Source: Ascidiella aspersa (taxonomy: Eukaryota). From it: DNA of 64,000 nt. Shown here in pieces: positions 75 to 56,470 of the stretch. Numbering within the stretch: position 1 is the stretch's first letter; every line of letters begins with the position of its first letter. The notes beneath the pieces were generated by a model. The model was given only the letters and a program-made list of their open reading frames with translations, was not told the origin of the DNA and ran no database searches. A program made the translations under genes and the position numbers. The stretch is taken from positions 26,598,001 to 26,662,000 of the forward strand of contig OZ004611.1 in the NCBI GenBank assembly GCA_963924565.1. The letters are read 5' to 3'.

Positions 75-4103
<4,029 letters not shown>

Positions 4104-10267: not shown

Positions 10268-13200
10268 ATGGCAGGTTATTTGCATTTGACGGTTCTTGCT
10301 ATTTTTACTTTTTTGGCTGTTTGCGACGGTAAGTATGGATTAGCCTATATTGACTTGTAATGAAATGCAAAAACTGAAGATTGAATAAGCGATCGTCAAT
10401 CAAACTTTAAATTAAATTGTATAGTAAATGTAAAACACTGTTATCAGTTGGTTGTGGTCGAATTTATAGCAAGGTAATGTTGTCCTATAGTTTTAAACGT
10501 GGTATTCGCGAATGTCAAGTGTTTTTATAAAGATTTACATGGGTTAATTGTATGGAAGTTGATTTTTGCAACCTTGGAATTTTTACCTGTTAGTGACTAT
10601 AGCTGCGAGTGAATATATTTAAACTTTTGAAATACTTTACGGAAAAAACGTTGAGGGCCCCGTTTTATTTGATTGTACAATTGCAACATAAAGAAATGCT
10701 TTTTATTATATATTTTTAACAGGGGTAGAAGGATTAAATTCGACAGACGCAGATGTTCAAACTACCAACAACAGTATTATAAAGCCAAATGCAATTCAGA
10801 AGCTACCACAGTATGACGCCTGCCACTATTTTAATCCCTGTTTAAACCAGGGAAGATGCACTTCAGAAGATATGACCAGGTATGTGACTGACAGTGTTAC
10901 ATCTATGAAATTTTCAGTAAGCTAATGTTTGTTCCACTGAGCATAAATGTTCTACGGGGTTAGTAAAGGTTACGAGTGAATTACATATTATGAATTAGTA
11001 GATTAAGTGTAACAGCTTTACATTCGCAAAAACGTACTCAAAGAATATACGGTTGCTGCCAGGCATTGTTTTAATTGTAAAATTATTCTTTCAGCAAAAA
11101 ATCTTTAAAATGCCAATATTACTGCAGCTATAGGCGATAAAACAAACTATATATATACCAGGTAACAACAGAGGAAAACAGGTTTAGAACCCTGACCATT
11201 GTGCTTTGTTTTATAATACAATTCAGCTATTTTACAAGTGCGCAAGAATCCATTTTTTTTCTGCTCAAATGGTCTGGTGGTTCTGCTCATATGCTTTGTT
11301 GCGTACCTGACAGAAGTGTCCAAAACCTGTGGGTGCGACCCCAGTTGCCTAAATTTGTTTGTTTTTCCCGAGGTCGCCTAAAATTTTTGTGAGGTCGCCA
11401 TAAAATGATCATATTTCCGTTTTAGTGCTCATTTATGTAGTTTTTTTTACAATGACGTCACACTAATAAACGTGACTGGGTGCATCTTCTACATAAAATT
11501 GCTGCTTTAGCTCTTAAAAGCTGCTAAATCATCTAACGTGACATTTAACAAAAATTAGCTTTGATTTAGCGTTTGAATGTTCGCAAATTGTTTCCCTGCA
11601 ACATTATTCCAATCAATTATAAATAGGGCTGCTTTAAAAAATGGTTTGTTAAGCGGGATTCAGCGCAATGAGCATATTATTCATGAAACATCGTAGGCCT
11701 ATATCACGTAGAAATAGAGCAAGGTCAGTGGTTACGTAAAGTGGATGCCAAAATTAGTGGAGAAACTATGCAGGCGCAACCATAGCACTGAATGCATTTA
11801 TTTTTGACACAAAATGAAATCTTTATGTTCCGTCGTGTGTTAAATTCAAATTTATTTTGTTGTGTACAATGTCCGCTCGTACTATTGCGTTTCAGCATTA
11901 TTTAAAATATTTTTATTCGTATTAGAAATCAAAATGGGGTTACAATGTAAATTATAATTGCATTTTATTTAAATTGGGGTCGCCAATTAAAAAGGTTGGA
12001 GGCCACTGCCCTAGAGTGAACACTGGTGATAGCAAGAAATTTAACAAATGCCGAATAAATACTTCGGCAACGAATGTAAACATTGTAGATTCAGATTTAG
12101 TAAAAAAAAGATCTTAACATTTATTTTCATCCGAGAATATTGACTAAAAAGACTTGTACCAAAAATAGCAGGCACAAAATAAAAATAAGTTATGGTTTTA
12201 CCAAATTTTTTTCCAACTTCATAAACACGTGGCTTTGTCCGTTATGACTTGACCCTACAGATTAAACTTTCCTAAATAATTTGTTTTTTTTACACGGCTT
12301 GTAGTAAATTTATTATGTTAACGTCCTTGCTATATAAAGCAAAATATACAGAAGACAAGAAGAGATCATAGTACTACCCTTTCTTCCCAAACCTGAAAAT
12401 TCTATAAAAAATGATTATTTTGGGGGGTTGTTGTGGATTTTACACGACACTGATTTTATTCATTTCGCACTTTAAAATTTAAATTTTCACGTTCTGTAGT
12501 ACTTCAATGCTGCAGCATGCCTCTAATTGAAAGCGAACCAAAGCAGTTTTCCTTGCGTCAAAAGGAAGTAACGAATGACGTGAGAGAAACCAAAGTCTCG
12601 CATCCGCGGTTGGAAAAACCAGAAGTTCGCCTTTGGGACTTTTTCAGAAACAACTTTCTCAAAATACCGAGCAGCGTGCACTCGAACAACATCCTGCATT
12701 GCGTAACATTATTGAACAAGCTGCGTCTTGTACGTTTAAACCATCAGGGGTCGGCAACCTTTTTCTAGTCGCGGGCCAAAACCAAACTCAGAAAGGTCTC
12801 TGCGGGCCGCACAACATATGTTAACTGAGATTTCGTGTTACCACAATTTTAAAACAACTGTAATTTAGGCGGGCCTCGGATTTGTTTGCATTTTAAAAAC
12901 GTGCTTAATTACATTCAGGGAGGTACAGTGTTGGCACAAAGCGCAAAATAAGCGTTTGCTTAGTTTGAAATTCGAGTCCATACGTCGTCATCCAAACTAC
13001 TAATGCAAAAATGTAATAGAACTACTTTAAAAAAACGCGATAATTTAACAGTTAATCTATTTTGATGTGTGTTAACCATTGAAATGGGGAACAACTAACG
13101 AGCGAAGCGAGCCCGATTTTTTTTAGTATAACTTTTCTCTTAAATTTCTTCCTAGTTTTTATTACATTTTCACAAAAATAATAGTTAAAAAATTTATGTC

Positions 13201-16200
13201 CAATATTTTTTAATACGTTTTCCGATTGTCCGCGACGCACTTGGCAGCCTTCCACGGCGCAACGGTAAAGAAGCGCTGATCTAGTTAAAAAAAAAACAGC
13301 ATCAGAACGTAAATAAAAACGGACGTAGAAAGAACAATCGCGCGAAGCGCAAAAAATTTTCGCATTTATGTAGTTAAAATAGTCAAAAAGTATGAGAAAT
13401 GGACTTGTGTCCAGTTTGTCCAAGAGGCGGCGGGCCGGATGAATTACATTGGCGGGCCGGATCCGGCCAGCGGGCCGTACGTTGCCGACCCCTGGTTTAA
13501 ACTAATGCAAGACATCACCGCAAACGCAGGACTACTGTCATCGTACAATAGGATGGGATATTACGAACTATCACCCAGTTGTGTAGCAATTTACAGACTG
13601 CCTGGTTAACCGTTTGAACTCATAAAATGCCATTCCGACAATACAGTATTGAACTTAAAAAAATACAATTAAAGCTAGAAGGTCTTCGTTGTAAGATTTG
13701 AAAGTGCCTATAAATATCTTATATCGCGATTAAATCATTTTCCGTTATTTAAATCGTCACGAAAAAAGGTATAAGTATAAGTAAGTAACCTGTCCCATTT
13801 TCTACAAAAGATTTCAGTATGGTCGTATAAAGCAAACATTTGTGATTATGAACTTTCCGCTCGTTTTTATTTCCCTAATAACTGGCTTACAAATTTCCCC
13901 TGAATTTTATCCCTCGAATAAGAGAAATAGGGCTTTCATAGATTGTAAGGTTGCTGTTACGTGTTCACTAACACATTAAACACCTAAATTAAATAATTAC
14001 CTTAAGCCAAAGAGTTCGTTTTATTATTAAGTTATATTACGAATTGATAAATAGGGTTTTAGATTACGCGTTCCAGCTTTCGTTTACCAAACATTTTTTT
14101 AAGTTACGATGATGTAATAATTTCCGTTTTATTGTAAAGTAGTTCGTCGATTTATTTGCAAAATTCCCAAGTTTTCTCGTTTCAAACTTGACATGTACCT
14201 GTAATCTCTTAATCTAAAACAGTCATTCTTGCGGGCGGTGTTCTCACGCTCTGCTTGTTTTGCTGGCGTCCCACTCCCGCTGCAATTTGGCCTTGGAGTG
14301 GGCGCTGTAATGCCTAGCCATGTTTTCAGAGTGCCGGCCAGTCTTATTGGCCAAATAGACGTGTAACTTTCTCGTTTTATATACCGTGTCTTAGCGGTTT
14401 TTCGCGCAGTCTAAGCAGTCTGCGCAGCCTTAAGCCAACAGTGGCTGCCATAGGCGGTGACTGGCTGTCTCACGTTTGCTTGAAAACAAATATGCGTTCA
14501 TTAATGCTTTTTGATAACGATTTAATTAACATTGTAACAATAGAATTTTGATTGGTATTTTAGTTGTGGTTATAACAGGTAGCATTTCTGACCAAAAATT
14601 TTCGCAAACCAAATAGAACTCACTCGGTTGCGACCCGCCTGGCAGCTGTATAGGGTTAGGCGCCAGGCCCCAGTACACAAGTCGCGGTGGCGCAACACGT
14701 GTTTGGGGGGAGCAACAGTTGCCATTATGGATGGCCAACCAATACCCTTTTATCGCAGCCGATCCTGTGTATGCGCCCCAGGGTACAAAGGCTCCCGCTG
14801 TCAATTCGTCGATTTCTGTCACGGGGACCCTTGTGGAGAGCACGGCGCGTGTGAGAGTCAAAGCCTGGGCTACGTTTGCAACTGTCGCGGTGGTAAGTAA
14901 GCAGAGGTGAAGAAAACGCGAAGACATTACAAACGACGGAAAGCATATAAGTCTAAAAAGTTGCACAATACCTAACTAACGCAAAGAATTATGTATTTAG
15001 GAACAAAAGTTTGTGTAAGTAACTAGAGTCCCCTTGTAAAGAGTGGAGACCCATCCCAATTTTTATACCCTTAAACTTTTCCGAATTCTGTTATTATTGT
15101 CAGTATTTAGAGAGAAGTGAAAATAAGTGGCTAACAGTCATTTAGGCCTACCGCTTCTTTTATACATCAGAAATTCTAAAAATTCGGAAATTAATTATTG
15201 ATTAGTAATTAGGACCTCACCTGGATCCGAACCCAACCGTTTTGCAAATTTGCTAACAGTCACCTTGACTTATATACATAGGCCTTGGTTAAGTCAGAAG
15301 AATACGAAAATTACTTTTATCCGAGATGGAGTAAGAGTCGTTTTTTACGTTGGGTATTGGGTGCTATTTATTGGAATTGGAAACGCTTTACACTTACAGA
15401 TTCTATTTCTCCATTTCCCTAAACGTTCAGCAGATAAAGTACAGTTAAATATTGATTATTTAAATGCCGGGGATTATTTTACATGCATTTCAAATAGCAC
15501 ACTAATTTTTGCAGATTACGTTGGCAAGCAGTGTAACTTGACTAATCCTTGTCTGGAAACCACATGCTTCAATGGCGGTATTTGTAGAGTGGACTCAACC
15601 ACAGCGAAATGCGACTGTCCGGATTCGTATTCGGGAAGGCATTGCGAGATACAATGCCGACCTACCACTGTAAGTATGAAGGGACTAAGTACGAAACTAG
15701 AATAACACTAACGTCGAATAAAACATAGTTCGGAGTAAGACCGAAAATAAGTTCCCATAATAAATATTAAAAAACAAAATTTAAATTTGAATAAGACCTA
15801 AATGTATCAGAATCAGTTCTACCCACATTTTATCTTAACGACCTACATCTGTACGTGAGCATTATGTTTTTAGACTAATATACTCCGTATTATATACGTA
15901 ACTTAAATGAGAAAAATTAATTTGTGCTGAAACCATGTCAAGGTAACATAATGATTTAGGAAGCTTTTGAATTATACATGATTTCGTTGGATTCGTTCCA
16001 CGTGTGCAACCTGGACAAATTTTTGTAACCGAAATATGTCCGATACTTGACACGATACCGATACCCGATATTTTTGGCAAAAAGTATTGTGTCCGATCGG
16101 ATGCGGAATGACATCATTCCTTTGATAAAACAAGCAAAATTGATAAAATTCAAAAGTTGAGAAGTAATTTTTTTCAGGTTATTAGGCCACCCTTCACTTA

Positions 16201-19200
16201 ATTCTTAAGCGTTTAAAAGTTGAGTTGCCTATTTGATGAAATAATAATAATATTATTATTATTTTTGTTAATTTTGGGATCTAAGCCTGCTCCAACATTG
16301 CTAGTTGTTGATCTCTTCTCCATATCGTAAGATTCAAGCAAAACCACAAAGGTTGTAAAAGAGATCCAAAAACAACTTTATTCAACAAAAGCAGAATACT
16401 ATAGTTACGATGCTTTTTGCGTAACTATAGTATTCTGCTTTTGTTGAATAAAGTCGTTTTTGGATCTCTTTTACAACCTTTGTGGTTTTGCTTGAGTTGC
16501 CTATGTTGTTCATTTTCTATACTTTGATAAATTTAACTTTCAAGGTAGAATAGCTGTTTTTAATCGCAAAAAAAGACTAAAAATCGTCTATTCAGTATCG
16601 GATCGGCTTCTATATCAATGCAGTATCGGCCTGGTACCATACTACCACTGGGAATCGGTTATCGGATCTAATCCGATATTATTGGACATCCTTAAACTTA
16701 GACATAAGTACACCTATGTACTGCAATTGTTCTCCGTTACAAAATTTCCGAAGAAATGTAACGCAATTGCTGGTCTTCAAGTTGCAATTATAATCGCTAA
16801 AATAATGATTTCAAATATTACGAGTCTTTAGAATCGGAAATACTGTGAGCAAGCAAATCATTTTAAACAAACACTGTGTACATTTTGGTGCGAGCCTTCA
16901 AACTGAGCAGCTTCATCAACGAGAATATATTTTCTCCACAGTATTGTTCGTACAGTGGAATAGAATGCTTAGTGCGTTCCAATTTAAGAATTACTTGCCA
17001 ATGCAGCAGCAACGTTCGACGTGGAATGGTTACTTGTGTTATGGAGGATGGTGAGTTGAAAGTTGATTCGTTTCAATTCAAGTCAGTTTGTAATAAAGCA
17101 GTGCCCCGCAACCTGTATGCCGGGAGAACGTGTCAGGTATTCCGGGGTGTTCCGGAGGATTTTAATTGCGTTTTTTCAAGGTACTTTTATTAAGCATAGT
17201 AGAATTAACACGAAAAATGTTACTACAGGGCAAGCTTTATACCTTACACAAAAACAAGGTGTAATTTTATGAGTTTTTCTTCAAAAAAACTATCTTACGT
17301 TCAATCGCCAAAAGTCATGTGTCGAAATATTTTTTTCAACAAAATCAAAAAGCAGGGATTTGAGCGTCAAAAATATTTAACAATAGTTTTCAACCATTAC
17401 ACCAAAGCGGAAAAGGAGACTATCCGTATCAGCACCCATGAAATTCCACTGTAAAATCATTAGCATTTTTGTCCTTAAAATATCGCCTCAGCAATTGTAA
17501 AATTAATTTGGCTGCTGTTTCGAAAACAATACTAAGCAAAAAGTGCAACACACGATAACCAGATTGCATTTTCCAAATGTAAATTTAAACGCTTCAAATG
17601 TCCTCTTATCCACTACAGTAAAAGTACACAAAAAATAAGTTTATTATGGTTGTATTTTGTATTACAATTTAGTGGATTTTTGTTATTTTTTACCTTCGTA
17701 TAGGTTCAAATAAATAATTTTTGGCTGTAGGATGACCTTAGGTACGAACAGTCCTTATATTGTTTTAGTTTGGAAATTATAAGCATAGTACACCAAAATA
17801 AAATATATATATTTATGCATTTATGCTAGGACGACATGACGTTGGCTACATCAAAATCAATTTGAAACAAAAAGAAATGAATTGCTCTTAAAATGTATTT
17901 AGGCACCAGTTTTCCCAATAAATTCAACTTAAAATTTCTCTTGTACACCGAAGGCCATGGCAGATTCAACGAATGTGTCGATAAATGATTGAAGCAACAT
18001 TGAGGTTCGAACTCACGACCTCCTATCATACCGGGACCGTCGCTCTACCAACTGTGCTACACAGGCTCAGAGAGGACGAGTCAAGTAAAACATAAGCCAG
18101 TGCCAATTTCTGTTAGTACAAGCAACTTCACATTGAGGTGGATCTACAGTCCCATATTAATTTTTTTCCTACTATTTTTCTAGAATTGGTAAACGAGTGC
18201 GGAACCCTGAGTAATCCCTGTAATGGTGGAAGTTGCACCGATTTGCAAAAAGGTTTTAAGTGTTCTTGTGGAGGGGGTAGAAGCGGTCCGAGATGTGAAA
18301 TACGAAACCCGTGTTATAGAAATGTAAGTTCCTTTGCATCTGTCTGGTATCGTCCGAAATAACCTATCTAAAGAAGTTAACATTTTATTAAGTTGAACAT
18401 GGTACTGTTACTACTACCCATACTAGGAGACTAAAGCGCAAGATGTCTTTCTAAGAAAATGCCTGCAAGACAATTTGATCGCAACACGCTTTTTGTCTTC
18501 TTTCAGTCGTGCAATGGCCGTGGCACCTGCACTGGAATCAGCAATACGGAGTACCGCTGCACTTGCAACACCGGTTATGAGGGAAAAAACTGTGAACATA
18601 GGAGCCGTGACACATCGTCACCAGGTTTTCGAAAAAAATCAGCTTAATGTTTCTTATCTTTAATTGATATTTTTCACCCAAGCATAAATAAGCTTTACCG
18701 TCCGTTTTATATTGGAAGTAGCTTATCGCCGTATACACCAATTATTATTAGTGTTCATTAGAGCGATTATTTTTTTATTTTTTTGAAAATGTCAATCTTT
18801 ACATGTAAGGTGAAAATTTGTCAAAATCCATTACAAAATAAATTAGAATAGTTTTGAATATTACGAAAAACCATACATTGAGCTTTTTAGAAATTGTAGG
18901 TGAGTAAAATTGTTTTTAGCAACAACATTATAACTGTGTTAAATCTTTATGAGAGCAACATATCGCGTACGCAAGCCGGCAGAATTCACAACGTATAGGC
19001 CTAGTTTATCAACTGTTCAACGATAAATGATTTGTCAACGCTTTTACGAAAGCTGGTCGCTATTTGTTGTCCAAAAATGTTTTACCTGGCTAGTTTGTGT
19101 TACACAGTAACGCTTACAATTACAGGCGCTCCTTGTAAAGTCTATTGTACAATGACCGGCATGAAGGTGACGTGCGAGCCCAGCAAGCTGCCAGCCGTTG

Positions 19201-22200
19201 CTCGTTCCGCGCCGCTTTACGCAAGGATCGCAGAACCACTCTACAACTGTACGTGTACCTTTCCACCAGAAACGAAGCCTTACCGAAACTACGATAATAG
19301 ATACTACCGCCCACGAACAGACGCCAACGGACGCCATTATCGATGGGAAGAAAGACGAAAACAGTGCGTCCTTCCATTCGACGAATGCGGAACTAAGATG
19401 CAGGTTAACGGGACTTGAAATTAGCGTTGTAGGCAGACTTGGACGGCTACATAATTCTAGTTTTATAATTCACTGAATTAGAGCAAAATGCAGCTAATTT
19501 TAATTCTAATCTAAATTGTGAATTGCTGGTGTGCTCTAATTCTAGCTCTAATTTTAATTCTAATCTAATTTAAGAAAGCTGATATAAATCTAGATGTCTA
19601 AGTCTGGTTGTTGTTTGTTCCTGTACTTAACTTCCAAAACTTATAAACTATGATGGCATTCCTAAAAATGATAATGCAATACGACATTGTTAAAAAAACA
19701 ATATTCATAATTCCCGCTAAATAAATAATGTAGCATTCATTACAAATTATTATTAAAGACGAATTGACAAGGAAAGACACTTTCTCAAACCGACTTTGCA
19801 GCCGCCCTGCTTATAAACTGCAGTACAACTCACAGTTCCAATATTACCGATGTATCTAAAAAAGGTTCAAGGTTTTGGGAAATGTGTGTCCAACTTTATT
19901 TCAAATTTAATCATAATGTTACATATATATATGAATTTATTTTCTGACATTTTTATGCGAATGTTAAAACGAATATAAACCATACTGAAGTGATTTCTAC
20001 ATTAGTTAAATATTTGTATATCGGACAACAAAAATGTTCTGTTTACTAACATTCAAATTTTAAAGGCTGTGTAAAGTTATAAATTAAAAGGAGTTTAGAG
20101 TTAAAAGTTTGAGCAGACGCGGTATAAGGAATTATTACAATGCGATTAAAAAAGGCTATTACTTTTGGACAGGTTGAAAGTGGAGAAATCGTTTACCACA
20201 ACATCTTGTCGTTGTACGAATTCGCATTGAAGCAACGTACACCGGAAGCATGGGAACAAGATATCCTCATTACAAGAAAGCGAGCAAAATTTGAGGTATA
20301 GAGACCGGTTGAACTTATTGTTGAGTAAAAATTATACCTCTATTTCCAACCTTTGTTGCCTGATTAAAAATTAGACTAAAGACTAAAATTAGGATAGCTA
20401 AATATCAATTGTGTGACCCATTGTTATTTAGACATACGTAACAGTTCGTCAGATTTAAATGACATCTTAATATGTATAAAGTTGTACGTTTTAATTGCAG
20501 ATTATAGTTACGACATCAAAAGGGAAAGCACATTTTTACTTTCATTGATGGTTATTTGTTTATTCCACTTAAAATAAAGTGTTTTTATATACCAAAGATC
20601 CAAGTGCAATGCAATGTTCCCACCAATTTAAAGAGCATTTGGAAAGCAATCGACAGCAAGGATTTGGATCCAACTGACAACTACGAAATAGTGGCAAACT
20701 CTTCAACAGGAAATAACTCTCTTACAATAAGCTATTATAGGTAATGCAACATGTGTTCAAAGTCAAGTGTATAAGCAACCACATGGAATGTAAACAGCAT
20801 ACTATTTGCTGTGGTACGGAACTGACGATAATACGAGATGTGTGCGTTTAACACGAGGGCAAACACCTTGACTCTTTTTATCAGGTTGAATGCAATTAAC
20901 AACACTCTGCAGCCGATAACAAATTTTCTCATTGGAGGAAGAATCTATGTACTGGTGAGTTTTAAGTTTGGTTTCCGCGTCAATGCCTTTAAAAAACGAA
21001 CCTTGTTAGTGCCCTAATATTTTTCACAAAATAATATCGCAATTCGCAGAAACTAATGATTTTTTAAATCTCCCACTCCAAAAAAGTAACAACAGACGAA
21101 GTTCAGAAGTTGAATTTTTTAGGTTCGACTGTCCTTGGAATACAACGAAAACGCCGATTTGAAGGGACAAGAACTTACACTCAGAAACTGCTACGCGACA
21201 GCATCTATGGACAAACAGCACGAGCCGCTGTATTACCTGCTTGAAAATGGGTAAAAGGAAGACTTTACTGTGCTTCAATGCGACACGAAATCAATTTATT
21301 TTAAAAATTGAGTCGGGCGGTTTACTACAAAACATTTAACAGAAAATAGTTATTTCATTATTAAAATAACCTACTTTTAAAAAAATATAAAACTTTGGGG
21401 ATGAATTACAAAAGACACCCTTATATAATTATGTATATTCAAACATTTAATGTGTTCTAATGTTAATAATAATACCCGTGGTATTATGGATTGCTACTGG
21501 TTTGATGCTGTGAAGACTCTAAAGCATATATAAACCAAGCAATTGTGTAGTCAATTTATTATTACAAATATATAATTCAACGTTGACCCAATGGAACATG
21601 TTTTTTCTTGTTTCAGTTGCGTGAAAGACCAAACATTTAGATATGAGAACGACTTGCTACAGGAACAAAACAGCTATACATTCACTGATTTTTATTTTAA
21701 GACTTTGATCAGTTTCGAAGCATTTAGGTTTAAAGACGACTTATCAAAGGTATCACAATTTCATTTACAGCGAAATTATGTTTTATTTAATTGTGTTTAG
21801 TAAACTATGTAATGCTAAGGGTATAGCATTGGTCCTCCCCTTGTGGTAAAAAAAATTGGGAAAGTCACAGGTGTTTAATATTTACCGCAATCGGTTATGA
21901 ATGTTAGTATCGGTTATAGACGATAAAAGTGCCTCAATGTTAACCGCGTCGTGTGTGGCATCGTTGGCGAGGTTTAAGCAAGCGCTACACGAATTTTTTG
22001 GGTCCCAAATGTTTTTTTCCGTTAAATTTTGTGTGCTGGGTATCTTCTGCTAACCCTATTGAGGAGGGGGGAGTCGCATGGAGTTAATTTATGGCGTTAG
22101 TTGATTGCGATAGAATATTAACTTCTTATTACGGTATTGTTTTACTTTAATTAGAAATTTAGCATAATTACACTTACAACAATTAAGTAAATCGAACTTT

Positions 22201-26445: not shown

Positions 26446-26813
26446 ACTTAGTCAATTAAGGATTTTTAAGCAAGCCAGTCTGGAAGAACAATAGCCTTAC
26501 GACCTGGGCCATGCCGGGCCCGCCGACCTACCTATACCAATCGACACAGGTTCAGACGTGAACAGGTCTAGAAACAACCTTAACATGCATTGCTTTTAAA
26601 CTGCACCACTTTTCATACTTTTAATAGCAATACATCATTAAAATTCTGAATACCGACTAGATGCAAGCATATGTTTGTTGTTGTTTAATTTGATTGATTA
26701 CCGTTCTTATACGTATCCTCTTCTCGTGGCTTCGTGCAGAAGGCAGAAAAAAATTTGCCACTAAAAAACATCACAAACTGTGATATCGCATCATTGGTTG
26801 CGAAACCACAGTC

Positions 26814-44500: not shown

Positions 44501-47500
44501 AATGTACTTTCAACGATATACGAAATTTAAAGATTTTTAACCGACAACTTATCTTATACCAACCGATCTTTAAAATCAGTCAATGGACATATAACTTGAT
44601 CCACAAGCACAAATTAGTTTTTTTTCCCAGAGCAGAAAAAATACTCGTATCCGATATTTAAGGGAGAGAACTAATTAAGCTTTGTACGGTACGTTTGGCT
44701 TAGAGAGCTAATTTACATATTTTAGCTATATATATTATTATGTGGTGCCTGTTGTAAGTTTCTCAAAGCATTTCAGTTAATAGTTTAGGGAAATTCGGGT
44801 ATTCTCCCTATAATCTGTAAACAACTATGTAGAGTGTAAAACAATAGTACGTTTCAAAAACACGATTATTTTTGCAGATTATGTCGGCAAGCATTGTGAG
44901 GTGGTCAACCCTTGTCTGGTAACTAAATGTCTCAATGGAGGTATTTGTAAGGTTGACTCGAACAAGGCGAAATGTGAATGCTCCCATCCGTATGCGGGAA
45001 AGCAATGCGAGACACAATGCCGGCCTACCATTGTAAGTATCGTCTTGTGAATAGGTATACTACTATTAAGGTATCAAGCTGGCAGGTTTTTTTGAGCTGG
45101 GCAGCTGGGGTATGCGAAGGTTTAGCAAAGGGGGCCGAAACACTAAAAACGAGGAAAAATATTCACTTATTTAATATCAAATTAGACAGATATTTTTAGC
45201 TACGTTTTACCGTGACAGACACACATTATTTTATTCTGATCACCTAATCTGTTTTTCTCAACGATATTAATCTTGTTTTTGCATTTTTCAGTTACAGTAG
45301 CCTGAAATGTGAATTTTACAATTTAAAGCGCCTCTTTGCACTGTTTGCGCGATGTTTCTATTCATATCATTGCGCCTACTAAACATATTATCCGGAGGGG
45401 GTGGGTTTCGATAAGTTGTGACGAGGGTGAAAAACTGAAACAAAACTAAAAACCTCTCCGCCTTTACATACTTCACTTTTTGTCTTTGTTTAAACATAAT
45501 TACGACAGGGCAGAATAAATATATACTTTTTCGTCTTCAGAGATGTTACTACACTGGCGGAACACTATGCGTTTTGCGTTCTAATTTAACAATTAAGAAT
45601 TGTGAATGCACGTACGACGTTCCACGTGGAAACTTCACGTGTGTAATGGAAGATGGTGAGTTAAAAGACTGTTAACGTTGCAATCACTCGAAAAAACAAC
45701 AAATAAATGCTGAATATTTCGATATAAACTGCAACGATAGTAGGTCGCTATTTGTTTTACAGAGTGATTTGTGTTGGGCCTATAATTAATTGTTTGAAAA
45801 TCAGGCCTTATGTTAATTATATTTAAAAAAATTAAGTTTGAGTTAGATTGCTGATAGTAGATTGTTTTACAGGCACAGGACGTGTATGATTACACAGTTT
45901 AAAATATAAAGATGCACAAATTTAAACAAATAATTGGGCCTATGATTAATTGTTGAAAATCAGGCCTAATGCTAATTATATTTAAAAAAATTATGTTTAA
46001 GTTAGATTGTTTTACAGGCACAGGCGTCATATATACATGCACAAATTTAAACAAAATATTCTTATATTTTACAACAAGACGATGGGCTTCACAGGAAACA
46101 ATTATTGAAAAGCACTGGCTATTAGCTTGTTTTTCAAAATAATTGTCCAGCAGTGCGTTTGGGTGTTGATGAGTGGTGTCCTGGTATAAACTCATCGATT
46201 TTAAAGAATCTTTGTAAATGTCCGTGTTGGTCTAATTCTAAATAAGGCAATCAGGTGGCCCTTTATACTAAAACAATGTTTAAAAGTTTTTCTACTTTGA
46301 CCTGATGAAGCACGGTTGTGCGAAAGCTTGTCGAGAATTTAAACAATTTGTCTTCATATAGTGCCACCTGGTTACCCTGTGTTTCGGTTTTCATCATTGG
46401 TTTTAATATGTTTTTAATTTGTTTTTAATAGAACTGGAAAACGAATGCAAAACCTTAGGGAATCCGTGTAACGGAGGAACCTGCATCGATTTGCGAAAAG
46501 GATTCAAGTGTAGTTGTTATGGCTCAAGAAGTGGTCCCAGATGCGAGATACACAACCCATGTCTTGGATTAAGACCTGTACTTAAATTAATGAAATAAAA
46601 ACCTATTGTAGGACAAGAACTGTCTATCAAAATAGAACACACAATTGGATCAATAAACCAGATTTACTGTAATTAAATGGAATAGGGCTGATGTCTTTGT
46701 TTTGTTATTTGTTTTGTTATTGAAGTTTGTCGTTGAATTGGGTTTAGAATTAGGTTGGACGTTGTTTAAATTGTATTGTGGTGCTTGAGGTGTTATTCTG
46801 ACAGGTATAGATCTTTCCGACATATACTTGTCAGTGTATTTTAAGCCCTATTCTGGAAGTGGTTTTATTTCGACATTGCCGTGAGTAGTTTCAAAGGTAT
46901 AAAAGGCCATGAGTGTGAAACAAACGATGAGCAACCAACTAAGTTGAGAGATTTAGTGTACGCGATAAAAACGATTAACATGCCGACGGCATATAAGTTT
47001 GTCGCTTAACGTCGTTCATCTTTTTTTAGGCGTGCAGTAATCATGGCACTTGCAGTAGAGTCAGCAACCACGAGTACCGCTGCACTTGCAATTTCGGTTA
47101 CGACGGCAAAGACTGTCAATACAGGAATAATGACACCACTGGAGCAGGTTTTCCGAAAACGCATTTGTTTTAATGTGTAGACAAAATTTAATTAACTGAA
47201 AAGTGCATGTTTCAGGATTTAACCAGGGGTGGTCCTAGGTTTTTGTTTTGGAGGGAAATTAAAATTTTCAGAGATGACGACACAGCGTACGTCAGTGGTC
47301 GCCAAACTTTATTGTTGCGGCCCAAAATACTTTTTCCAGGCTATTAAAGTTCCACTAGAAAAAGAGGGGAGAATCCAGGATTATTTGGGGGGTTGGGATG
47401 CACGTTTTTAGAAAATCGTCACAAAGTTATGTCATAATAAAATTTACCTTTAAACCACCAGCTGACTTGAGCAAACTCGTGCGCAAATATGCAGCTGAAG

Positions 47501-50500
47501 CAGACTACAATCTTTTGTATTTTCATACTAAAAATTGGCTAAAATTATAGTTTAGAGCAGTGCTCCGCAACCGTCGTGCCGCGACGTTCCCGGTGGTGTT
47601 TTCTTGCGAGTTTGCTGGTGTTTTCTTGCGTTTTTTGCGGTGGTTTCCTGCGTTTGTTATTGTAGTTTTGGCAGTATAATTAAACAAAAATGGTATATTA
47701 AGGTTCTAACCGTAATCAAGGTGTAGGCCAAACTTAGAAACTTTCCTTAATTTGAAACTAAATCCTATGTTATGTCAATCGCCGGAAGTCGAATTTGAAA
47801 GCATTTTTTTAACTCACTCAACTAACAGGAGTATAAATATATAGCAATTGTTTTCTAGTCACAATAGAAAAATATCTAAAATCGTCAACCTAAACATGTC
47901 AAAATTTTTTCATGGGAAATTAGGCCTATAAATGGACATTCATGGAAATTGGGCCTATAAATGAATAAAGTAGCCTAAAAATGTAATAGGGGGCTATTGG
48001 ATGATCAGGGTTTATCAATCTGGAATTGGATGTTTTGGTATCGACGTTTTGGCGCTGTAATTTTTAAGGGGTTATGGGGTCGTTGGCGCGCCGCTGTTTA
48101 ACGGGTATCCGTATCCGCTTTGTCGAGAATTTAAACAATTTGTCTTCATATAGTGCCACCTGGTTACCCTATGTTTCGTTTTTCATCATTGGTTTTATAT
48201 GTTTTTAATTTGTTTTTAATAGAACTGGAAAACGAATGCGAAACCTTAGGGAATCCGTGTAACGGAGGAACCTGCATCGATTTGCGAAAAGGATTCAAGT
48301 GTCGTTGTTATGGCTCAAGAAGTGGTTCCAGATGCGAAATACACAACCCATGTCTTGGATTAAGACCTGTACTTAAATTAATGAAATAAAAACCTATTGT
48401 AGGACAAGAACTGTGTATCAAAATAGAACACACAATTGGATCAATAAACCAGATTTACTGTAATTAAATGGAATAGGGCTGACGTCTTTGTTTTGTTATT
48501 TGTTTTGTTATTGAAGTTTGTCGTTGAATTGGGTTTAGAATTAGGTTGGACGTTGTTTAAATTGTATTGTGGTGCTTGAGGTGTTATTCTGACAGGTATA
48601 GATCTTTCCGACATATACTTGTCAGTGTATTTTAAGCCCTATTCTGGAAGTAGTTTTATTTCGACATTGCCGTGAGTAGTTTCAAAGGTATAAAAGGCCA
48701 TGAGTGTGAAACGAACGATGAGCAACCAACTAAGTTGAGAGATTTAGTGTACGCGATAAAAACGATCAACAGGCCGACGGCATATAAGTTTGTCGTTTAA
48801 CGTCATTCGTCTTTTTTTAGGCGTGCAGTAATCATGGAACTTGCAGTAGCGTCAGCAACCACGAGTACCGCTGCACTTGCAACTTCGGTTACGACGGAAA
48901 AGACTGTCAATACAGGAATAATGACACCACTACAGCAGGTTTTCCGAAAACGCATTTGTGTGTAGACAAAATTTAATTAACTGAAAAGTGCATGTTTCAG
49001 GATTTAACCAGGGGTGGTCCTAGGTTTTTGTTTTGGAGGGAAATTAAAATTTTCAGAGATGACGACACAGCGTACGTCAGTGGTCGGCAACTTTATTGTT
49101 GAGGCCCAAAATACTTCTTCCAGGCTATTAAAGTTCCACTAGAAAAAGAGGGGAGAATCCAGGATTATTTGGGGGGTTGGGATGCAAGTTTTTAGAAAAT
49201 CGTCACAAAGTTATGTCATAATAAAATTTACCTTTAAACCACCAGCTGACTTGAGCAAACTCGTGCGCAAATATGCAGCTGAAGCAGACTATAATCTTTT
49301 GTATTTTCATACTAAAAATTGGCTAAAATTATAGTTTAGAGCAGTGCTCCGCAACGGGCGTGCCGCGACGTTTCCGGTGGTTTCCTGCGTTTGTTATTGT
49401 AGTTTTGGCAGTACAATTAAATAAAAATGGTATATTAAGGTTCTAACCGTAATCAAGGTGTAGGCCAAACTTAGAAACTTTCCTTAATTTGAAACTAAAT
49501 CCTATGTTATGTCAATCGCCGGAAGTCGAATTTGAAAGCATTTTTTTAACTCACTCAACTAACAGAGTATAAATATATAGCAATTGTTTTCTAGTCACAA
49601 TAGAAAAATATCTAAAATCGTCAACCTAAACATGTCGAAATTTTTTCATGGGAAATTAGGCCTATAAATGGACATTCATGGAAATTGGGCCTATAAATGA
49701 ATAAAGTAGCCTAAAAATGTAATAGGGGGCTATTGGATGATCAGGGTTTATCAATCTGGCATTGGATGTTTTGGTATCGACGTTTTGGCGCTGTAATTTT
49801 TAAGGGGTTATGGCGTCGTTGGCGCGCCGCTGTTTAACGGGTCGTTTTCCCTGTTTGGGGTTAATGGTGAATAGCTTAATGCTTGGGGTTAGAAAATAAG
49901 TTAGGGTTGGAATTATTAGAAAGTTAGTGATGAATTTAAGGGTGGGGTTTGAGGTTAGGTAAAATGTTATATAGGCCTTGTTCTAGACGTTTAGGTCTTA
50001 TTCAGATCGGTTTAGAACAGCGGTTCTTAACCTATGGGTAATTACCCACATGTAGGTAATTTTCAGGATAGCAGGTGGGTAATCAGCTGAACCTGAATAT
50101 CTAGAATTATGGTTGTAACAAACAATGTCACAGCTGTTAGTGATAAGTTGCTTTATTACTTACACTTTTTTGATGTTTTGAGTGCTTTTAATTTTTAAAA
50201 CAACCAAACTAGAACAAGGATATTTCATCATTTTATCATTGTTTCGTCATAGTGATTATTTTTGTGACCGGTATTACGTATTTTATTTTTATATTACGTA
50301 ACAGTATGATTTTTCTTGTATCCGCTTACGGCTAGCCTAGCTATTTTTTCATTATCAGTTTGCTGTTGGTGTTTATTTTTGAAGGTATTCTTAGTGGAAT
50401 TGTTTGGAGTAGTATACGATAGCTATAAGTGTGCGTTTCCAGTTACGAGCGAGCTATAATTTGTTTAATTACGCTGTTTTAAATTTTTAGTACTTGGTGG

Positions 50501-53500
50501 AATAGCAAAATGGGTAAAATTAGATTTTGGGTAATGGGTAATGGGATCTGAACAGAAAAGGGTAATAAGGAAAAAGGTTAAGAAACCCTGGTTTAGAACG
50601 TATTGTGATTTAGACGTTATTACGACTATGAAGTATTAGTCCTATTTTGGTCTTATTCCGAAATGTGTTTTATTTTGACGTTGATTTAATTTCGGTCTTA
50701 TGGCTGAAGTCCCTTTAGTCGTCTTAAGATATTTTAGGAAGATCGTGAAATAAAAAGATAAGATAGCGTAAAACGTCTAATTGTTGGCGCCTTCGACAAT
50801 TTTAATCATAAATCGCTCATTTTTCTCTTAGGTAGACTAGGATATTTGCATACGTGGTTTATTGTCGATGGACATATATTTCGTAGCAGTGCCGCCGAAT
50901 TTTTTAGCACTGTCGTTGTGCTGCAAGTTAAAAAGGTGCCCAGCACTGGTTTAGAAGGGCCATTGTCTTTGAGACCCTGTCACTGCAGGCTAGTTTTTTC
51001 TAACCTGCCTTGCTTTAATTTTCACAGACTGTTGATATTTTCTACAGCTTACCGCTCACATTTTCAGGTCCTCCTTGCAGAGCGTTTTGTACCTCGACCG
51101 GCATGCGGGTGACATGTTATGCAGGCAAGCTACCAACCGTTGTGCGTTCCGCGACGCTTCACGCAAGGATTGCAGAACCGCGCTCCAATTGCACGTGCAC
51201 CTTTCCACCGGAGATCGAGAGCTACCGGGTTCGCGCATCAAGGTATTCCTCGGATAGTCGATGGGATAGCTCTTGGGGCTACTACCGATTGAAGAAAACA
51301 GAAAAACAATGTGTCCTGCCGTTTAGTGAATGCGGAACAAAGATGCAGGTATGATCAACGAAGCGTTATCGAATATAACAAAAAATACAGCTATGTTCAT
51401 TTTCTCTTTCTCTCTTCTATTCTTTTTCTCATTTTTGTCTCTTTTTTACTTTATCGCTCTTCTCTTTCTCTCTCTCTTTCTCTTTTATCCGTTTGGTCAG
51501 CCAATATGAGTTTGATGACCTTCCTTTTTACATGATATTAAATCACCTTATAGTTTGTACTTGTTACTGGATGATTTACCTTTACAAAAATATTTAACAA
51601 CGACAGGTCAAAAGTGGAGAAATCGTTTACCACAATGTCTTGTCATTGCACGAATTCGCATTGAAGCAACGTACACCGGACACATGGGAGCAAGATAGCC
51701 TTATAACAAGAAAGCGACCAAAATTTGAGGTAGGAGTCTGGGAATTTATGTAGATTCAAGCAAAAGAGGTAATTGTGGATGCTAACCTTGTTTATATATT
51801 TAATTCGTGATCCGCGTTACGATTTCATAAATTGACCCGCCATTCCTATATGTTCCACGCCCCTGATTTAAATGACACTTTGTGGATAATGCTACACTCG
51901 GTGAGTTTCATATTTGAGTGACCGGCCATCATTCAAATTCTTGCAATAGTATTTTTTTCGTTTCAAGACCGGTAGGCCTATAAAGTGTATACTGCTTTCG
52001 AATGTACGAATTTTGACACCTAAGATAATATTTTATGTGATTTAAATTCGTGTTGACTGTTTTGAATGATACCAAAGATCCAAGTGGAGTGCAAAGTTCT
52101 TACTCATCTGAAAAGTTGGTGGAATCAAATTGACAGCAAGGATATGGAGACAACAAACAACACAGAGATATTTGCCAATTCTTCAGTTGGAAACTTTTCA
52201 ATGGTCACCAAATATTTCAGGTAAAGTAATAAACGTTTAATAAGCGCAAAAAACCTCAGCTGCGTTATATCCTTTTCGCTTATCAAATGATGTTATCACA
52301 ACTGGAGGCTATCGAGGTTACTGTAATTAACCAAATGAATAACGATGATTATGCTACCTGATTCCAATAATAGTAATTTGTTAATGTCTAGCAGCAAACC
52401 TTAAGCATGCGCAAAGTGTTTATTGTAGCTTACTTAAACGTATGCTTTCTAATGTTTTTGGTATATTTTTTATGTGTTTACAGAAGTATGTTCATTTAAA
52501 ATTTACTGTGAGTTAAATTCGCTGTAAAAAGTAAATTGAACCTATACTAATATTTTGTAAGTGCTGTGCTGTTGACTGCTTCGGATGTAGGCTACATGTA
52601 GAAAAACTTAAAATACATTTAAAAAAAAATAGATTTGCAGAATAAACCGAAAATTTTCAAAGGTCATAAAATATTTCAGGTAAAGTAGTAAGCTTTTAAG
52701 ATCATGTGCAAAGAAAACCTAAGCGAAAGCTGTCTGTACATCATTTGCTTATCGAATGATGATATCATAATTGGAGGCTATCGAGGTTACTGTAATTAAC
52801 TTTGTAATGAATAACGTTGATCATGTTTGCCAGGTTGAATTCGACAAGTAAAATCCTGCAGCCGATAACAGATTTCCTTATTGGCGAAAGAATCTATGTG
52901 CTGGTAAGTTTTTTAAACAGGTGTTGTGTTTTTTATTTTGTAAACGATCACAAAATATTACAAAACTCCCCAAAAAAAAATTATGAACGAGTCCCTTGTT
53001 AAAGGACAAGTTACTTTGAAAATTAAATTTTCATATTTCTTGTAACAACCCCAAAAAACTAACCATTGGCTGTCTATTTAGTAATGGTAAAAGTATTTGT
53101 AGATGAACTCTGGTTGCGCGCAAATAATTTTGATCATTTATTTTGTTTAAAAACTCTTTTACTGTATTAAAGAATTCCCAAAATGCAAAACCAATATGGA
53201 GTATAGTTACTTTTTAAAAACAGCCTGGTTACAACGTTTGTATTCAAACCAAAAAAGATTGATCTTCCTCGCAATATTACCTTTAACAAAACGAGCCCAC
53301 GTAAAGCCTTAAAATTTGGACAACTATTCAATTACAATTCGCGAACACTTGAACACCTCCTAATCAAAAACGGCAAAAATCAACTAACCTAAGTAATTTT
53401 TTAATGAACCCTAAAAGTATTAAATTTTTGGGTTAAGAAATACATGGCCGGCCTGTTTTTTTTAGGTGCGAATGTCGTCTGATTACAACAAAAACGCTGA

Positions 53501-54573
53501 GCTAAAGGGACAAGAGCTTACACTCAGGAACTGCTACGCGACAGCATCTAAGAACAAACAGCACAAGCCGCTGTATTATTTGCTCGAAAATGGGTAAATC
53601 GAAAACCAGGCCCAACCACGAGCCAACAGCTTTTAGACTAATAAAATACGAAAACTTTCAGATTAAAAAAATCGGACGGTTTTCTAACAACGTTTGAACA
53701 TGAAATAATTATTTGTTGCTGATAATAGCGTAAAAAAATTATGAAACTTGTTTTAAACGTTAAAATAAATGTACACTTGCAAAATGCCATATTTAATAAA
53801 ACATTTTATAGTTTTTATTTGTCACAATAAACATGAGATTATAAATTGCTCTTGTCTCCGATTTGTGAATAATTGTTTTAATTCCAATTTACCGTTTTTA
53901 ATTCAAACTCATTAATAAAAGGTAATTTATACAAAATATATAATTCAACGTTGACCCAATGGAACTTTTTTTTTTTCAGATGCGTGAAAGACCAAACATT
54001 TAGATATGAGAACGACTTGCTACAGGAACAAAACAACTCGACATTCACTGATTTTGATTTTAAGACTTTGATCAGTTTCGAAGCATTTAGGTTTAAAGAC
54101 GACTTATCAAAGGTACAATATCACAAATTCCGTGTAACCTAAAGTATAATAGAAATGTGCTTATTTTCTATAAATGCACTTTTAAGAGATACATAGCATA
54201 TAATATCGCACAGTAGTATAATATAATACAGATATAAATTTAATGTTGTGTTAAAAGCTTTTAAACCATAATAGATTTATTTGGGTCTCAATCAAGACTT
54301 TCTGCTGAAAAATAAACCGAAGGGTCAATAAAGGTACCATGTGAAAAAAAGATTTTAAACGCAATTTTTCTTTTTGGCGATATTTAGGTCTATATTCGGG
54401 TCGAAGCCGACATATGTTACAAGACTTCGAACTGTAATTCCTGCAATGATGCTAAAGGCTCAGCAAGAAACAGAAGAAATGTTGAGCTTGGGCTTAAAAA
54501 GCCTTATGCTGGTGGTTCACATTTTAATGCCGAAGTTAATGAAGGAATTGGAGTTGTGGGTTTGATTCAATAA
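41508..54573 (+). CDS. EGF-ZP gene C: signal peptide, 8 EGF-like repeats (exons 6-7 duplicated) and ZP module (about 737 aa)
   Basis: Exons 41508-41568, 42352-42508, 44057-44190, 44878-45032, 45541-45655, 46432-46577, 47030-47147, 48223-48368, 48821-48938, 51068-51348, 51607-51729, 52078-52220, 52834-52903, 53466-53593, 53980-54112, 54388-54573. Open throughout; furin site RNRR. Confidence 0.85.
46326..49842 (+). repeat. Intragenic tandem duplication of about 1.75 kb carrying exons 6-7 of gene C
   Basis: 46326-48106 is repeated at 48117-49842, with junction filler atccgtatcc at 48107-48116. Confidence 0.92.
50018..50590. mobile_element. hAT-type MITE (573 bp) present in gene C only
   Basis: TIRs cagcggttcttaacct / aggttaagaaaccctg; perfect TSD gtttagaa (50010-50017 and 50591-50598). 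Confidence 0.85.
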
Positions 54574-56192: not shown

Positions 56193-56470
56193 TATGCCGG
56201 TGGTTCACAGTTTAACGCATAAGTTAAAGAAGGAATGGGAGTGTTGGTTCAATTCAGTGGAATAGTATCCAGTAAAACTAATCCGGCACTATTGTCACAG
56301 CTTATAATCACAAGGTTTCAATAATATCGAAATCAAAAACAAAATTATTTTTTAAGCTTTGATTACCAGCGCTTGTGTTTCAAAACAATCCTTTAGTGTT
56401 TTTTCAACAATTTGTTTCTAAAACTTACGAAAACATAAACGAATACTGTTTATTATTACAATTGACGTGC
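56193..56470 (+). pseudogene. Fragment of the last exon and 3' UTR of a further EGF-ZP copy
   Basis: Translates YAGGSQFNA*VKEGMGVL..QWNSIQ* with an in-frame stop and a frameshift, followed by 3' UTR-like agtaaaactaatcc as in genes B and C. Confidence 0.75.

What the first reader, a model, noticed from the sequence alone, without database searches (positions are those of the whole stretch)
10268..56470. Birth-and-death array of secreted EGF-ZP genes with a variable EGF head on a conserved ZP stalk: candidate recognition or egg-coat system
Seen: three intact tandem paralogs plus at least three relic fragments. EGF exons differ strongly between copies with every Cys kept, EGF number varies (6, 6, 8), and ZP-C exons are nearly invariant. 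Known: signal peptide + EGF repeats + ZP is the architecture of the Halocynthia vitelline-coat precursor VC120/VC70, a candidate self/non-self gamete recognition protein whose EGF number differs between species. Inference: this is a lineage-specific multi-copy family building a ZP polymer that displays diversified EGF heads, in egg coat, tunic, mucus filter or adhesive. It is shorter than VC120 and has no membrane anchor.
Basis: partly seen in the sequence, partly recalled or inferred. Interest (0 to 1): 0.85.

Follow-up and report, generated by a model that had tools for sequence, protein, structure and literature searches.

The report
Tandem trio of secreted EGF-ZP genes
Three neighbouring, intact genes of a sea-squirt-like genome encode secreted proteins with 6, 6 and 8 EGF repeats on a zona-pellucida polymerisation module; this is a young local expansion of a kind of protein already known from ascidian egg coats, and the "variable head on a constant stalk" look comes mostly from recent copying between two of the genes, not from selection.

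Summary
There are three intact + strand genes: A 10268-23036 (14 exons, 648 aa), B 26814-38631 (14 exons, 647 aa) and C 41508-54573 (16 exons, 737 aa). All introns are GT-AG and no model has an internal stop. Each encodes a signal peptide, 6/6/8 EGF repeats, a ZP module and a furin-type site, with no membrane anchor. Small relics are present.

EGF reaches Pfam's cut-off on single exons. ZP-C scores only 19 bits per exon in the window. It is secured through a colinear full-length homolog, Phallusia mammillata CAB3244027.1 (40% identity, E 3e-145), which scores 58.8 bits for PF00100. ZP-N is inferred only.

- B and C are a mosaic. Intron divergence is K 0.32-0.50 over EGF1-4 and 0.02-0.10 from EGF5 to the stop, so the constant stalk is recent homogenisation.
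- Against A and against Phallusia, the head is no more variable than the stalk.
- No region has dN/dS clearly above 1.
- The family has exactly three copies in this genome.

An egg-coat role is plausible by architecture (HrVC120, HrVLP-1, CiVC57) but untested.

Earlier scan notes (s1-802070, s1-802226) concern this same window, not other DNA. This is a new member of a known kind, of moderate interest.

The parts
10268..23036 (+). Gene A, 14 exons, 648 aa: signal peptide, 6 EGF, ZP module. Exons 10268-10328; 10723-10879; 14759-14892; 15515-15669; 16942-17050; 18184-18323; 18507-18624; 19126-19403; 20173-20295; 20598-20740; 20885-20954; 21123-21250; 21617-21749; 22839-23036
   Evidence: GT-AG at all introns and an open frame. 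Colinear with P0001 without indels at any junction.
26814..38631 (+). Gene B, 14 exons, 647 aa, 6 EGF + ZP. Exons 26814-26874; 27720-27876; 29944-30077; 31020-31174; 32056-32164; 32828-32973; 33440-33557; 35161-35441; 35700-35822; 36171-36313; 36929-36998; 37556-37683; 38072-38204; 38446-38631
   Evidence: 67.5% amino-acid identity to A and 91.7% to C.
41508..54573 (+). Gene C, 16 exons, 737 aa, 8 EGF + ZP. Exons 41508-41568; 42352-42508; 44057-44190; 44878-45032; 45541-45655; 46432-46577; 47030-47147; 48223-48368; 48821-48938; 51068-51348; 51607-51729; 52078-52220; 52834-52903; 53466-53593; 53980-54112; 54388-54573
46328..49842 (+). Internal tandem duplication in C: a unit of about 1.79 kb holding two EGF exons (46328-48106 and 48120-49842), in frame
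   Evidence: 94.9% identity over 1779 nt; intron 6 vs intron 8 98%; dS 0.03-0.15.
14759..18624 (+). EGF exons 3-7 of A (EGF1 starts in exon 2, 10723-10879). EGF boundaries do not coincide with exon boundaries.
   Evidence: PF00008 scores 28.1 bits on exon 4 and 24.1 bits on exon 7 (cut-off 21.5). B exons 4 and 7 score 28.9 and 28.2 bits.
19126..20740 (+). ZP-N-like part and linker of A (exons 8-10). Equivalents: B 35161-36313, C 51068-52220.
   Evidence: Eight conserved Cys and the motifs V-x-C-x4-M-x-V, C-G-T-K-M-Q and I-Q-V-x-C. No Pfam ZP-N hit. Atlas structure neighbours of P0001 residues 300-631 are all ZP proteins, at TM 0.38-0.49.
20885..23036 (+). ZP-C part of A (exons 11-14). Equivalents: B 36929-38631, C 52834-54573.
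   Evidence: Exon 12 of A, B and C each hits PF00100 positions 44/46-74 at E about 1.5e-3 and 19 bits. The aligned region of P0001 (483-601) scores 58.8 bits against a cut-off of 24.6 and matches uromodulin in the PDB at 9e-8.
22917..22928 (+). Furin-type site RKKR of A (B RNKR 38524-38535; C RNRR 54466-54477). It is followed by 31-35 residues with a short hydrophobic strand (GVGVLGSIQW / IGVVGLIQ) and then the stop.
   Evidence: The only strongly hydrophobic 19-residue window is the signal peptide. P0001 also ends 20 residues after RKKR.
32438..38765 (+). Homogenised tract of B (C equivalent about 46040-54715). It runs from intron 5 to about 135 nt past the stop and is 94-99% identical including introns.
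21553..21762 (+). Short conversion-like patch around exon 13 of A. It is 92-94% identical to B 38010-38222 and C 53934-54115 and includes intron flanks; there are 0 synonymous changes in 44 codons.
24832..26595 (+). 5' relic between A and B. It holds flank-like sequence (24832-25019, ending about 36 nt short of where the ATG would be) joined to intron-2-like sequence (25024-25262 and 26452-26595), interrupted by a dispersed repeat at 25414-26125. No exon is present.
56193..56295 (+). 3' relic downstream of C: the tail of a last exon (YAGGSQFNA*VKEGMGVL) with an in-frame stop, 81-82% identical to B and C.
36743..36920 (+). Copy of the exon-10 tail and intron start inside intron 10 of B (the same in C at 52649-52825).

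Best explanation
The stretch holds a three-gene tandem cluster of an ascidian-type genome. Each gene encodes a secreted glycoprotein built of a signal peptide, a short N-glycosylated leader, 6 (A, B) or 8 (C) EGF repeats, a ZP polymerisation module (a divergent ZP-N, a linker and a ZP-C), a furin-type cleavage site and a short C-terminal propeptide with a hydrophobic strand. There is no membrane anchor.

By analogy with other ZP proteins (inferred, not shown), cleavage at the R-x-K/R-R site would release the blocking strand and let the ZP modules assemble into filaments carrying the EGF arms. The matrix is most plausibly the vitelline coat, where ascidian EGF-ZP proteins are known.

The evolutionary history is shown by the sequence.
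- The three genes are each other's closest relatives and are the only copies in the genome. Together they correspond to one known Phallusia mammillata protein.
- A split off first (dS about 0.6-0.7).
- B and C keep an old 5' third (signal peptide to EGF4, intron K 0.3-0.5).
- Their 3' two thirds (EGF5, EGF6, the ZP module and the stop) were made nearly identical recently, by gene conversion or unequal crossing-over (intron K 0.02-0.10).
- At about the same time C gained two EGF repeats by duplication of an exon pair.
- A short patch around exon 13 was also copied between A and B/C.

All parts are under purifying selection. The head-versus-stalk contrast is mainly a difference in age.
For: Gene models: (all GT-AG, conserved phases, no stops). 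Every splice junction is bridged without indels in the alignment to P0001 (blastp E 3e-145, 40% over 577 aa).

Domains: PF00008 is above its cut-off on single exons. PF00100 scores 19 bits on exon 12 of each gene and 58.8 bits on P0001. There is a uromodulin ZP-C match, and all Atlas neighbours are ZP proteins.

No anchor: and the end of P0001.

Copy number: only three loci in 308 Mb match the ZP-N exon profile and exon 13.

Mosaic: intron K values, boundaries, and dS 0.167 against 0.032.

Selection: dN/dS 0.26-0.46.

Architecture in ascidian egg coats: PMC9265791 (HrVC120 with 12 EGF + ZP; HrVLP-1 with 5 EGF + ZP; CiVC57 with 24 EGF + ZP) and PMC3543715 (EGF domains are frequent in urochordate ZP proteins).
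Against: - No expression or tissue data were obtained, so the egg-coat assignment rests on architecture alone.
- ZP-N is not detected by Pfam or by a PDB profile search.
- The whole-genome PF00100 scan did not flag the window.
- ZP-C in the window is below the cut-off exon by exon.
- The AlphaFold model of P0001 from a single sequence was useless (pLDDT 31).
- Phallusia mammillata is reported self-fertile (PMC9265791), so the family cannot be a dedicated self-sterility factor everywhere.
- No specific sequence kinship to VC120 could be shown. An exhaustive profile search with the ZP-N exon found only two clusters, neither named VC120.
Confidence: 0.75

Rival explanations
1. A gamete-recognition or self/non-self array. 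In this reading the EGF heads, especially EGF2-4, are kept different by diversifying or balancing selection, while conversion keeps the polymerising stalks compatible, as proposed for HrVC70/HaVC80.
For: The architecture, and EGF-number change by duplication, parallel HaVC80 versus HrVC70 (PMC9265791). B-C amino-acid differences cluster in EGF2-4 (72, 78 and 68% identity against 94-100% in EGF1, 5 and 6). Exon 4 has dN/dS about 1 (12.5 replacement against 3.5 silent changes). The conversion tract stops short of EGF1-4.
Against: Silent and intron divergence are raised in the same region, so age explains the pattern. Pooled dN/dS is 0.46 or lower. Substitutions are spread evenly over the EGF loops rather than concentrated between Cys3 and Cys4 as reported for VC70 (PMC9265791). 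Against Phallusia the head is not more diverged than the stalk. No polymorphism or expression data are available.
Confidence: 0.15
2. A somatic apical-matrix ZP family (tunic or epidermal cuticle, pharyngeal or endostyle mucus net, gut lining) with no role in fertilisation.
For: ZP proteins with EGF repeats also build non-reproductive matrices, for example uromodulin (PMC7486124) and mollusc shell-matrix EGF-ZP proteins (PMC9290575). This genome has at least 46 other ZP-C exon hits, several in arrays, so most of its ZP genes cannot all be egg-coat genes. Purifying selection is moderate throughout.
Against: Nothing direct. The characterised ascidian EGF-ZP proteins named in PMC9265791 are vitelline-coat components.
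Confidence: 0.3
3. B and C are an assembly artefact: uncollapsed haplotypes of one gene placed in tandem.
For: Their 3' two thirds differ by only 2-5%, including introns, which is within the range of allelic divergence known for ascidians (own knowledge).
Against: Their 5' thirds differ by K 0.32-0.50 in introns, with many indels. C has two more exons. Each gene has its own diverged 5' flank and 3' flank. The window has no gaps. Two samples of one study hold 73% and 56% of the words of 32000-41999, though these may include the source sample.
Confidence: 0.04

Closest known systems
Phallusia mammillata 'protein eyes shut-like' (CAB3244027.1 / A0A6F9DCV6), uncharacterised
   Same: Colinear over the whole mature protein: 6 EGF, the same 49 Cys, a ZP module, RKKR, a short tail and no anchor. 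37-40% identity, E 3e-145 to A.
   Different: Only one such protein was found for Phallusia, against three genes here. No member with 8 EGF is known there. The name is automatic: no laminin-G domain is present.
Halocynthia roretzi HrVLP-1 / HrVLP-2 and HrVC120 (precursor of the sperm receptor HrVC70), and H. aurantium HaVC80
   Same: Signal peptide + EGF repeats + C-terminal ZP. HrVLP-1 has 5 EGF, which is close to 6. The EGF number changed by duplication of one repeat between species, as in gene C (PMC9265791).
   Different: VC120 has 12-13 EGF and is cut between the EGF part and the ZP part. Paralog differences are not focused between Cys3 and Cys4. Vitelline-coat localisation is untested.
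Ciona CiVC57 and other Ciona vitelline-coat ZP proteins
   Same: EGF repeats followed by a ZP module in an ascidian (PMC9265791, PMC3543715).
   Different: [quoted passage not shown] The genes here have none of these.
Uromodulin / GP2 (vertebrate EGF-ZP filament proteins)
   Same: EGF repeats N-terminal to a ZP module, with polymerisation triggered by cleavage before a blocking hydrophobic strand (PMC4755741, PMC7486124). It is the best PDB match of the ZP-C part.
   Different: Uromodulin has a D8C domain and a GPI anchor. The similarity is confined to ZP-C.
Teleost egg-envelope ZP gene arrays
   Same: Tandemly amplified ZP genes (PMC13704971). Secreted ZP proteins without a membrane anchor (own knowledge).
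   Different: No EGF head, and a different ZP subfamily.

Membership tests
EGF-like domain proteins | Six-Cys EGF fold recognised by PF00008 above the gathering score | tested here: met
   Exon 4 and exon 7 of A score 28.1 and 24.1 bits; B exon 4 and exon 7 score 28.9 and 28.2 bits; the cut-off is 21.5. 36 EGF Cys are conserved in A, B and C.
ZP-module proteins | ZP-C domain (PF00100) above the gathering score | tested here: inconclusive
   Window exons alone: only exon 12 of each gene hits, at 18.9-19.2 bits against a cut-off of 24.6. The six-frame genome scan did not flag the window. The colinear homolog P0001 scores 58.8 bits over residues 483-601, which align to A 486-602 at 41% identity. 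The joined window proteins were not scanned.
ZP-module proteins | ZP-N domain (PF23344) N-terminal to ZP-C | tested here: inconclusive
   No Pfam hit for exon 8 or for P0001 even at E 10, and no PDB profile hit. Position, length, conserved Cys and the C-G-T motif fit. Atlas structural neighbours of P0001 300-631 are ZP-N + ZP-C proteins at TM 0.38-0.49.
ZP-module proteins | Consensus furin-type site after ZP-C, followed by an external hydrophobic patch | tested here: met
   RKKR / RNKR / RNRR 31-35 residues before the stop, then GVGVLGSIQW / IGVVGLIQ. The function of the patch is inferred.
ZP-module proteins | Polymerisation into filaments | not testable with these tools
   Needs protein work.
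Ascidian vitelline-coat EGF-ZP proteins (HrVC120/VC70, HrVLP, CiVC57) | Signal peptide + EGF repeats + C-terminal ZP | tested here: met
   The architecture is described in PMC9265791.
Ascidian vitelline-coat EGF-ZP proteins (HrVC120/VC70, HrVLP, CiVC57) | Gonad expression and presence in the vitelline coat | not tested
An RNA run of the organism exists (X7).
Ascidian vitelline-coat EGF-ZP proteins (HrVC120/VC70, HrVLP, CiVC57) | Sequence kinship beyond shared domains | not testable with these tools
   No VC120, VLP or VC57 sequence could be fetched. Searches with the ZP-N exon profile and with P0001 returned no other EGF+ZP protein.
Ascidian vitelline-coat EGF-ZP proteins (HrVC120/VC70, HrVLP, CiVC57) | Variation focused between Cys3 and Cys4 and in the inter-EGF linkers (VC70) | tested here: not met
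   Between paralogs the differences are even across loops (0.15-0.24 for B-C; 0.26-0.43 for A-B, except 0.67 at the six single-residue Cys4-Cys5 positions), and the linkers are the least variable. Variation between individuals was not tested.
Eyes shut (EYS), the name given by the source of P0001 | EGF repeats interleaved with laminin-G domains | tested here: not met
   There is no Laminin_G hit in P0001 or in the window exons; a ZP-C domain is present instead.

The most novel reading that the evidence does not exclude
The array is a gamete- or allo-recognition locus. Conversion deliberately keeps EGF5-6 and the ZP stalk of B and C interchangeable for co-polymerisation, while the old, divergent EGF1-4 modules are protected from conversion and carry the specificity. 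Copy number and EGF number would then vary between individuals.
Probability: 0.12. Interest if true: 0.7.

Novelty: new member of a known kind. Interest (0 to 1): 0.4.

Why it matters
Ascidian EGF-ZP proteins are the best candidates for egg-coat sperm receptors outside vertebrates, and how such genes diversify is an open question. This locus is a compact, fully resolved example: three intact paralogs, a fresh in-frame gain of two EGF repeats, and a sharply bounded homogenised tract. It also carries a warning. A 'variable head on a conserved stalk' can arise from partial gene conversion alone, so intron divergence must be checked before selection is invoked. If expression in oocytes or follicle cells were shown, the trio would be a tractable model for how ZP matrices gain new surface modules.

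Tried and rejected
- The whole-genome PF00100 scan gave no hit in the window, so I tested exon by exon instead.
- Pfam on single ZP exons gave only exon 12 weakly and no ZP-N.
- A PDB profile search with the ZP-N exon gave nothing meaningful.
- An Atlas search with the window's ZP-N exon gave no usable hit.
- AlphaFold of P0001 without an alignment had mean pLDDT 31. I discarded it and ran no fold search.
- The alignment of P0001 with single exons (A2) was misaligned because EGF exons stacked on each other, so I did not use it for folding.
- The search for homologous proteins with P0001 returned only EGF-only proteins (Notch, Delta, Jagged, Crumbs types) besides P0001 itself.
- The spliced models were joined only inside scripts, for alignment and dN/dS. 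The joined proteins were not sent to Pfam, structure or database searches.
- I rejected the 12742-13424 / 25414-26125 match as a gene relic: it is a dispersed repeat of about 680 bp with thousands of candidate copies.
- I rejected the haplotype-artefact reading because of the old 5' thirds.

Full report
**What is in the sequence**

A self-comparison of the window shows three tandem units on the + strand, at about 10.2-23.8 kb, 26.7-39 kb and 41.4-55 kb. I used conservation between units to find exons. I then fixed the splice sites by requiring AG/GT, an open frame and equal phases.

- Gene A is 10268-23036 (14 exons, 648 aa).
- Gene B is 26814-38631 (14 exons, 647 aa).
- Gene C is 41508-54573 (16 exons, 737 aa).
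- All introns are GT-AG, and none of the three joined frames has a stop.

The genome is a 308.6 Mb assembly of 75 contigs, and the window is C5:26598001-26662000. The window contains no N.

**Domains**

Each protein begins with a hydrophobic 20-residue exon. This is the only strongly hydrophobic 19-residue window in the protein. A short leader with N-x-S/T sites follows.

Next come six EGF repeats, eight in C. PF00008 is above its cut-off on single exons of A and B.

The C-terminal 350 residues could only be tested exon by exon. The operators do not allow a joined model to be sent to search tools, so I left that joined step out.
- Exon 12 of each gene hits the ZP-C model PF00100 at positions 44/46-74, with 19 bits and E about 1.5e-3. 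This is below the 24.6-bit cut-off.
- The six-frame genome scan did not flag the window.

**The Phallusia homolog**

An exhaustive profile search of 1.8 billion representative proteins with the ZP-N-like exon (alignment A1) found two clusters only.

P0001 is Phallusia mammillata 'protein eyes shut-like', CAB3244027.1 / A0A6F9DCV6.
- It is 631 aa long.
- It aligns colinearly with gene A at 40% identity over 577 residues, E 3e-145.
- It scores 58.8 bits for PF00100 over residues 483-601, plus four EGF stretches.
- Its ZP-C part matches uromodulin in the PDB at 9e-8.
- All ten nearest Atlas structure clusters, and all but one of the feature clusters shown, carry ZP-type domain families (PF00100, PF23344, VERL_C or CUT). 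Structural alignments span residues 300-631 at TM 0.38-0.49.
- A residues 486-602 align to its ZP-C envelope at 41% identity.

I therefore take ZP-C as established by homology. ZP-N remains inferred. The inference rests on position, eight conserved Cys and the motifs V-x-C-x4-M-x-V, C-G-T and I-Q-V-x-C. Neither Pfam's ZP-N model nor a PDB profile search sees it.

The alignment to P0001 crosses all thirteen junctions of gene A without an indel. This is independent support for the splice models.

**C-terminus**

All three genes have an R-x-K/R-R site: RKKR at 22917-22928 in A, RNKR at 38524-38535 in B and RNRR at 54466-54477 in C. A 31-35 residue tail follows, with a short hydrophobic strand, and then the stop.

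There is no transmembrane or GPI-type segment. P0001 ends the same way. The lack of an anchor is therefore a family trait and not a missed exon.

**Copy number and relatives**

- In the whole genome, only the three window loci match the ZP-N exon profile and exon 13.
- Searches with P0001 found no other EGF+ZP protein, only EGF-only proteins.
- A, B and C are 67-92% identical to each other and 37-40% identical to P0001. Under any rough clock they are in-paralogs that arose after the split from the Phallusia lineage.
- The second cluster (P0002-P0005) comes from metagenome contigs. Six such loci carry homologous EGF5, EGF6+ZP-N and later exons.
- These loci come in two versions that are about 80-85% identical and co-occur in the same samples.
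- The family therefore reaches beyond one species.

**The head-versus-stalk claim**

Between B and C the amino-acid contrast is real: 69-96% identity in the EGF exons and 89-100% in the ZP exons. But the introns show the same contrast, and more sharply:

| B vs C introns | Divergence (K) |
|---|---|
| Introns 2-4 | 0.32-0.50 |
| Introns 5-6 | 0.07-0.10 |
| Introns 7-13 | 0.024-0.048 |

The step lies in intron 5 at about B 32430 / C 46040. High identity ends about 135 nt after the stop. Silent divergence follows the same pattern, at dS 0.167 in the EGF part and 0.032 in the ZP part.

B and C are therefore mosaics. They have an old 5' third (signal peptide to EGF4). Their 3' two thirds (EGF5, EGF6 and the ZP module) were recently homogenised by gene conversion or unequal crossing-over. 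The exon-pair duplication in C is of similar age (units 95% identical, intron 6 vs intron 8 98%).

Against A:
- dN/dS is 0.36-0.38 in the EGF part and 0.26 in the ZP part.
- The ZP-N exons 8 and 10 and the last exon are as diverged as the EGF exons.
- Only exons 9, 12 and 13 are well conserved.
- Exon 13 has no silent change in 44 codons and has conserved intron flanks (21553-21762, 92-94% identical). This looks like a short conversion patch.

Against Phallusia, the EGF part (41-45% identical) is not more diverged than the ZP parts (39-41%).

No region shows dN/dS clearly above 1. Exon 4 of B vs C is about 1, on 16 changes. Differences are spread evenly over the EGF loops, unlike the Cys3-Cys4 focus reported for VC70 (PMC9265791).

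**Relics**

- Between A and B lies a piece that joins 5' flank-like sequence to intron-2-like sequence. It has no exon (24832-25262 and 26452-26595) and is interrupted by a dispersed repeat.
- Downstream of C lies the tail of a last exon with a stop (56193-56295).
- B and C each carry a copy of the exon-10 tail inside the next intron.

These fit a history of unequal exchanges. None is a multi-exon pseudogene.

**Function**

The architecture matches ascidian vitelline-coat ZP proteins (PMC9265791):
- HrVC120: signal peptide, 12 EGF, ZP.
- HrVLP-1: 5 EGF + ZP.
- HrVLP-2: 1 EGF + ZP.
- CiVC57: VWF, 24 EGF, ZP and a transmembrane domain.

EGF domains are noted as frequent in urochordate ZP proteins (PMC3543715). 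HaVC80 differs from HrVC70 by one duplicated EGF repeat, which parallels gene C.

This makes an egg-coat matrix role the most plausible single guess, but it is an analogy. I give it somewhat under one half. A somatic matrix role is a serious rival.

I could not test expression. An RNA run of the organism exists (X7).

Purifying selection over dS of about 0.6-0.7, with all 49 mature Cys and all splice sites kept, argues that the genes are functional.

**Verdict**

This is a new, uncharacterised member of the known class of ascidian EGF-ZP proteins, expanded locally to three copies. Its most instructive feature is the sharply bounded homogenised tract, which mimics a 'conserved stalk'.

Noticed in passing
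window 12742-13424 (+) and 25414-26125 (inverted): A dispersed repeat of about 680 bp. The own-genome search gave 4418 first-look candidates, and 40 scored copies at 79-90% identity on all large contigs. It is probably a non-autonomous mobile element.
   Followed up: partly
window 1616-1888 and 3405-4103 (+): Open frames upstream of gene A with a C2H2 zinc-finger motif ([25 protein letters not shown]) and a Ser/Pro/Gln-rich region. This is probably a transcription-factor gene.
   Followed up: no
window 59566-59955 and 63196-63531 (+): Cys-rich open frames downstream of the array. The second has an LDL-receptor class A-like motif (CDQRRDCLDGSDE).
   Followed up: no
window 39810-40086: Short tandem repeat (period about 75-80 nt, 78-82% identical copies) in the B-C intergenic region.
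   Followed up: no
G000 C7:20722075-20946183, C7:11076739-11119042, C3:17210346-17287896: The PF00100 scan of the genome shows other clusters of ZP-C exon hits (5, 4 and 4 hits). Tandem ZP gene arrays therefore seem common in this genome.
   Followed up: no
L017-L019 versus L020-L022 (metagenome contigs): Two versions of a related EGF-ZP gene, colinear at about 80-85% identity including introns, occur together in the same JGI samples. They could be paralogs, deep alleles or two host species.
   Followed up: partly
I worked beside them from then on.
   Followed up: no
window 27720-27876 vs 42352-42508: Exon 2 of B and C is 96% identical (dS 0.13), although it lies in the old, unhomogenised third where intron 2 has K 0.32. 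This may be a second small conversion patch or strong constraint.
   Followed up: partly
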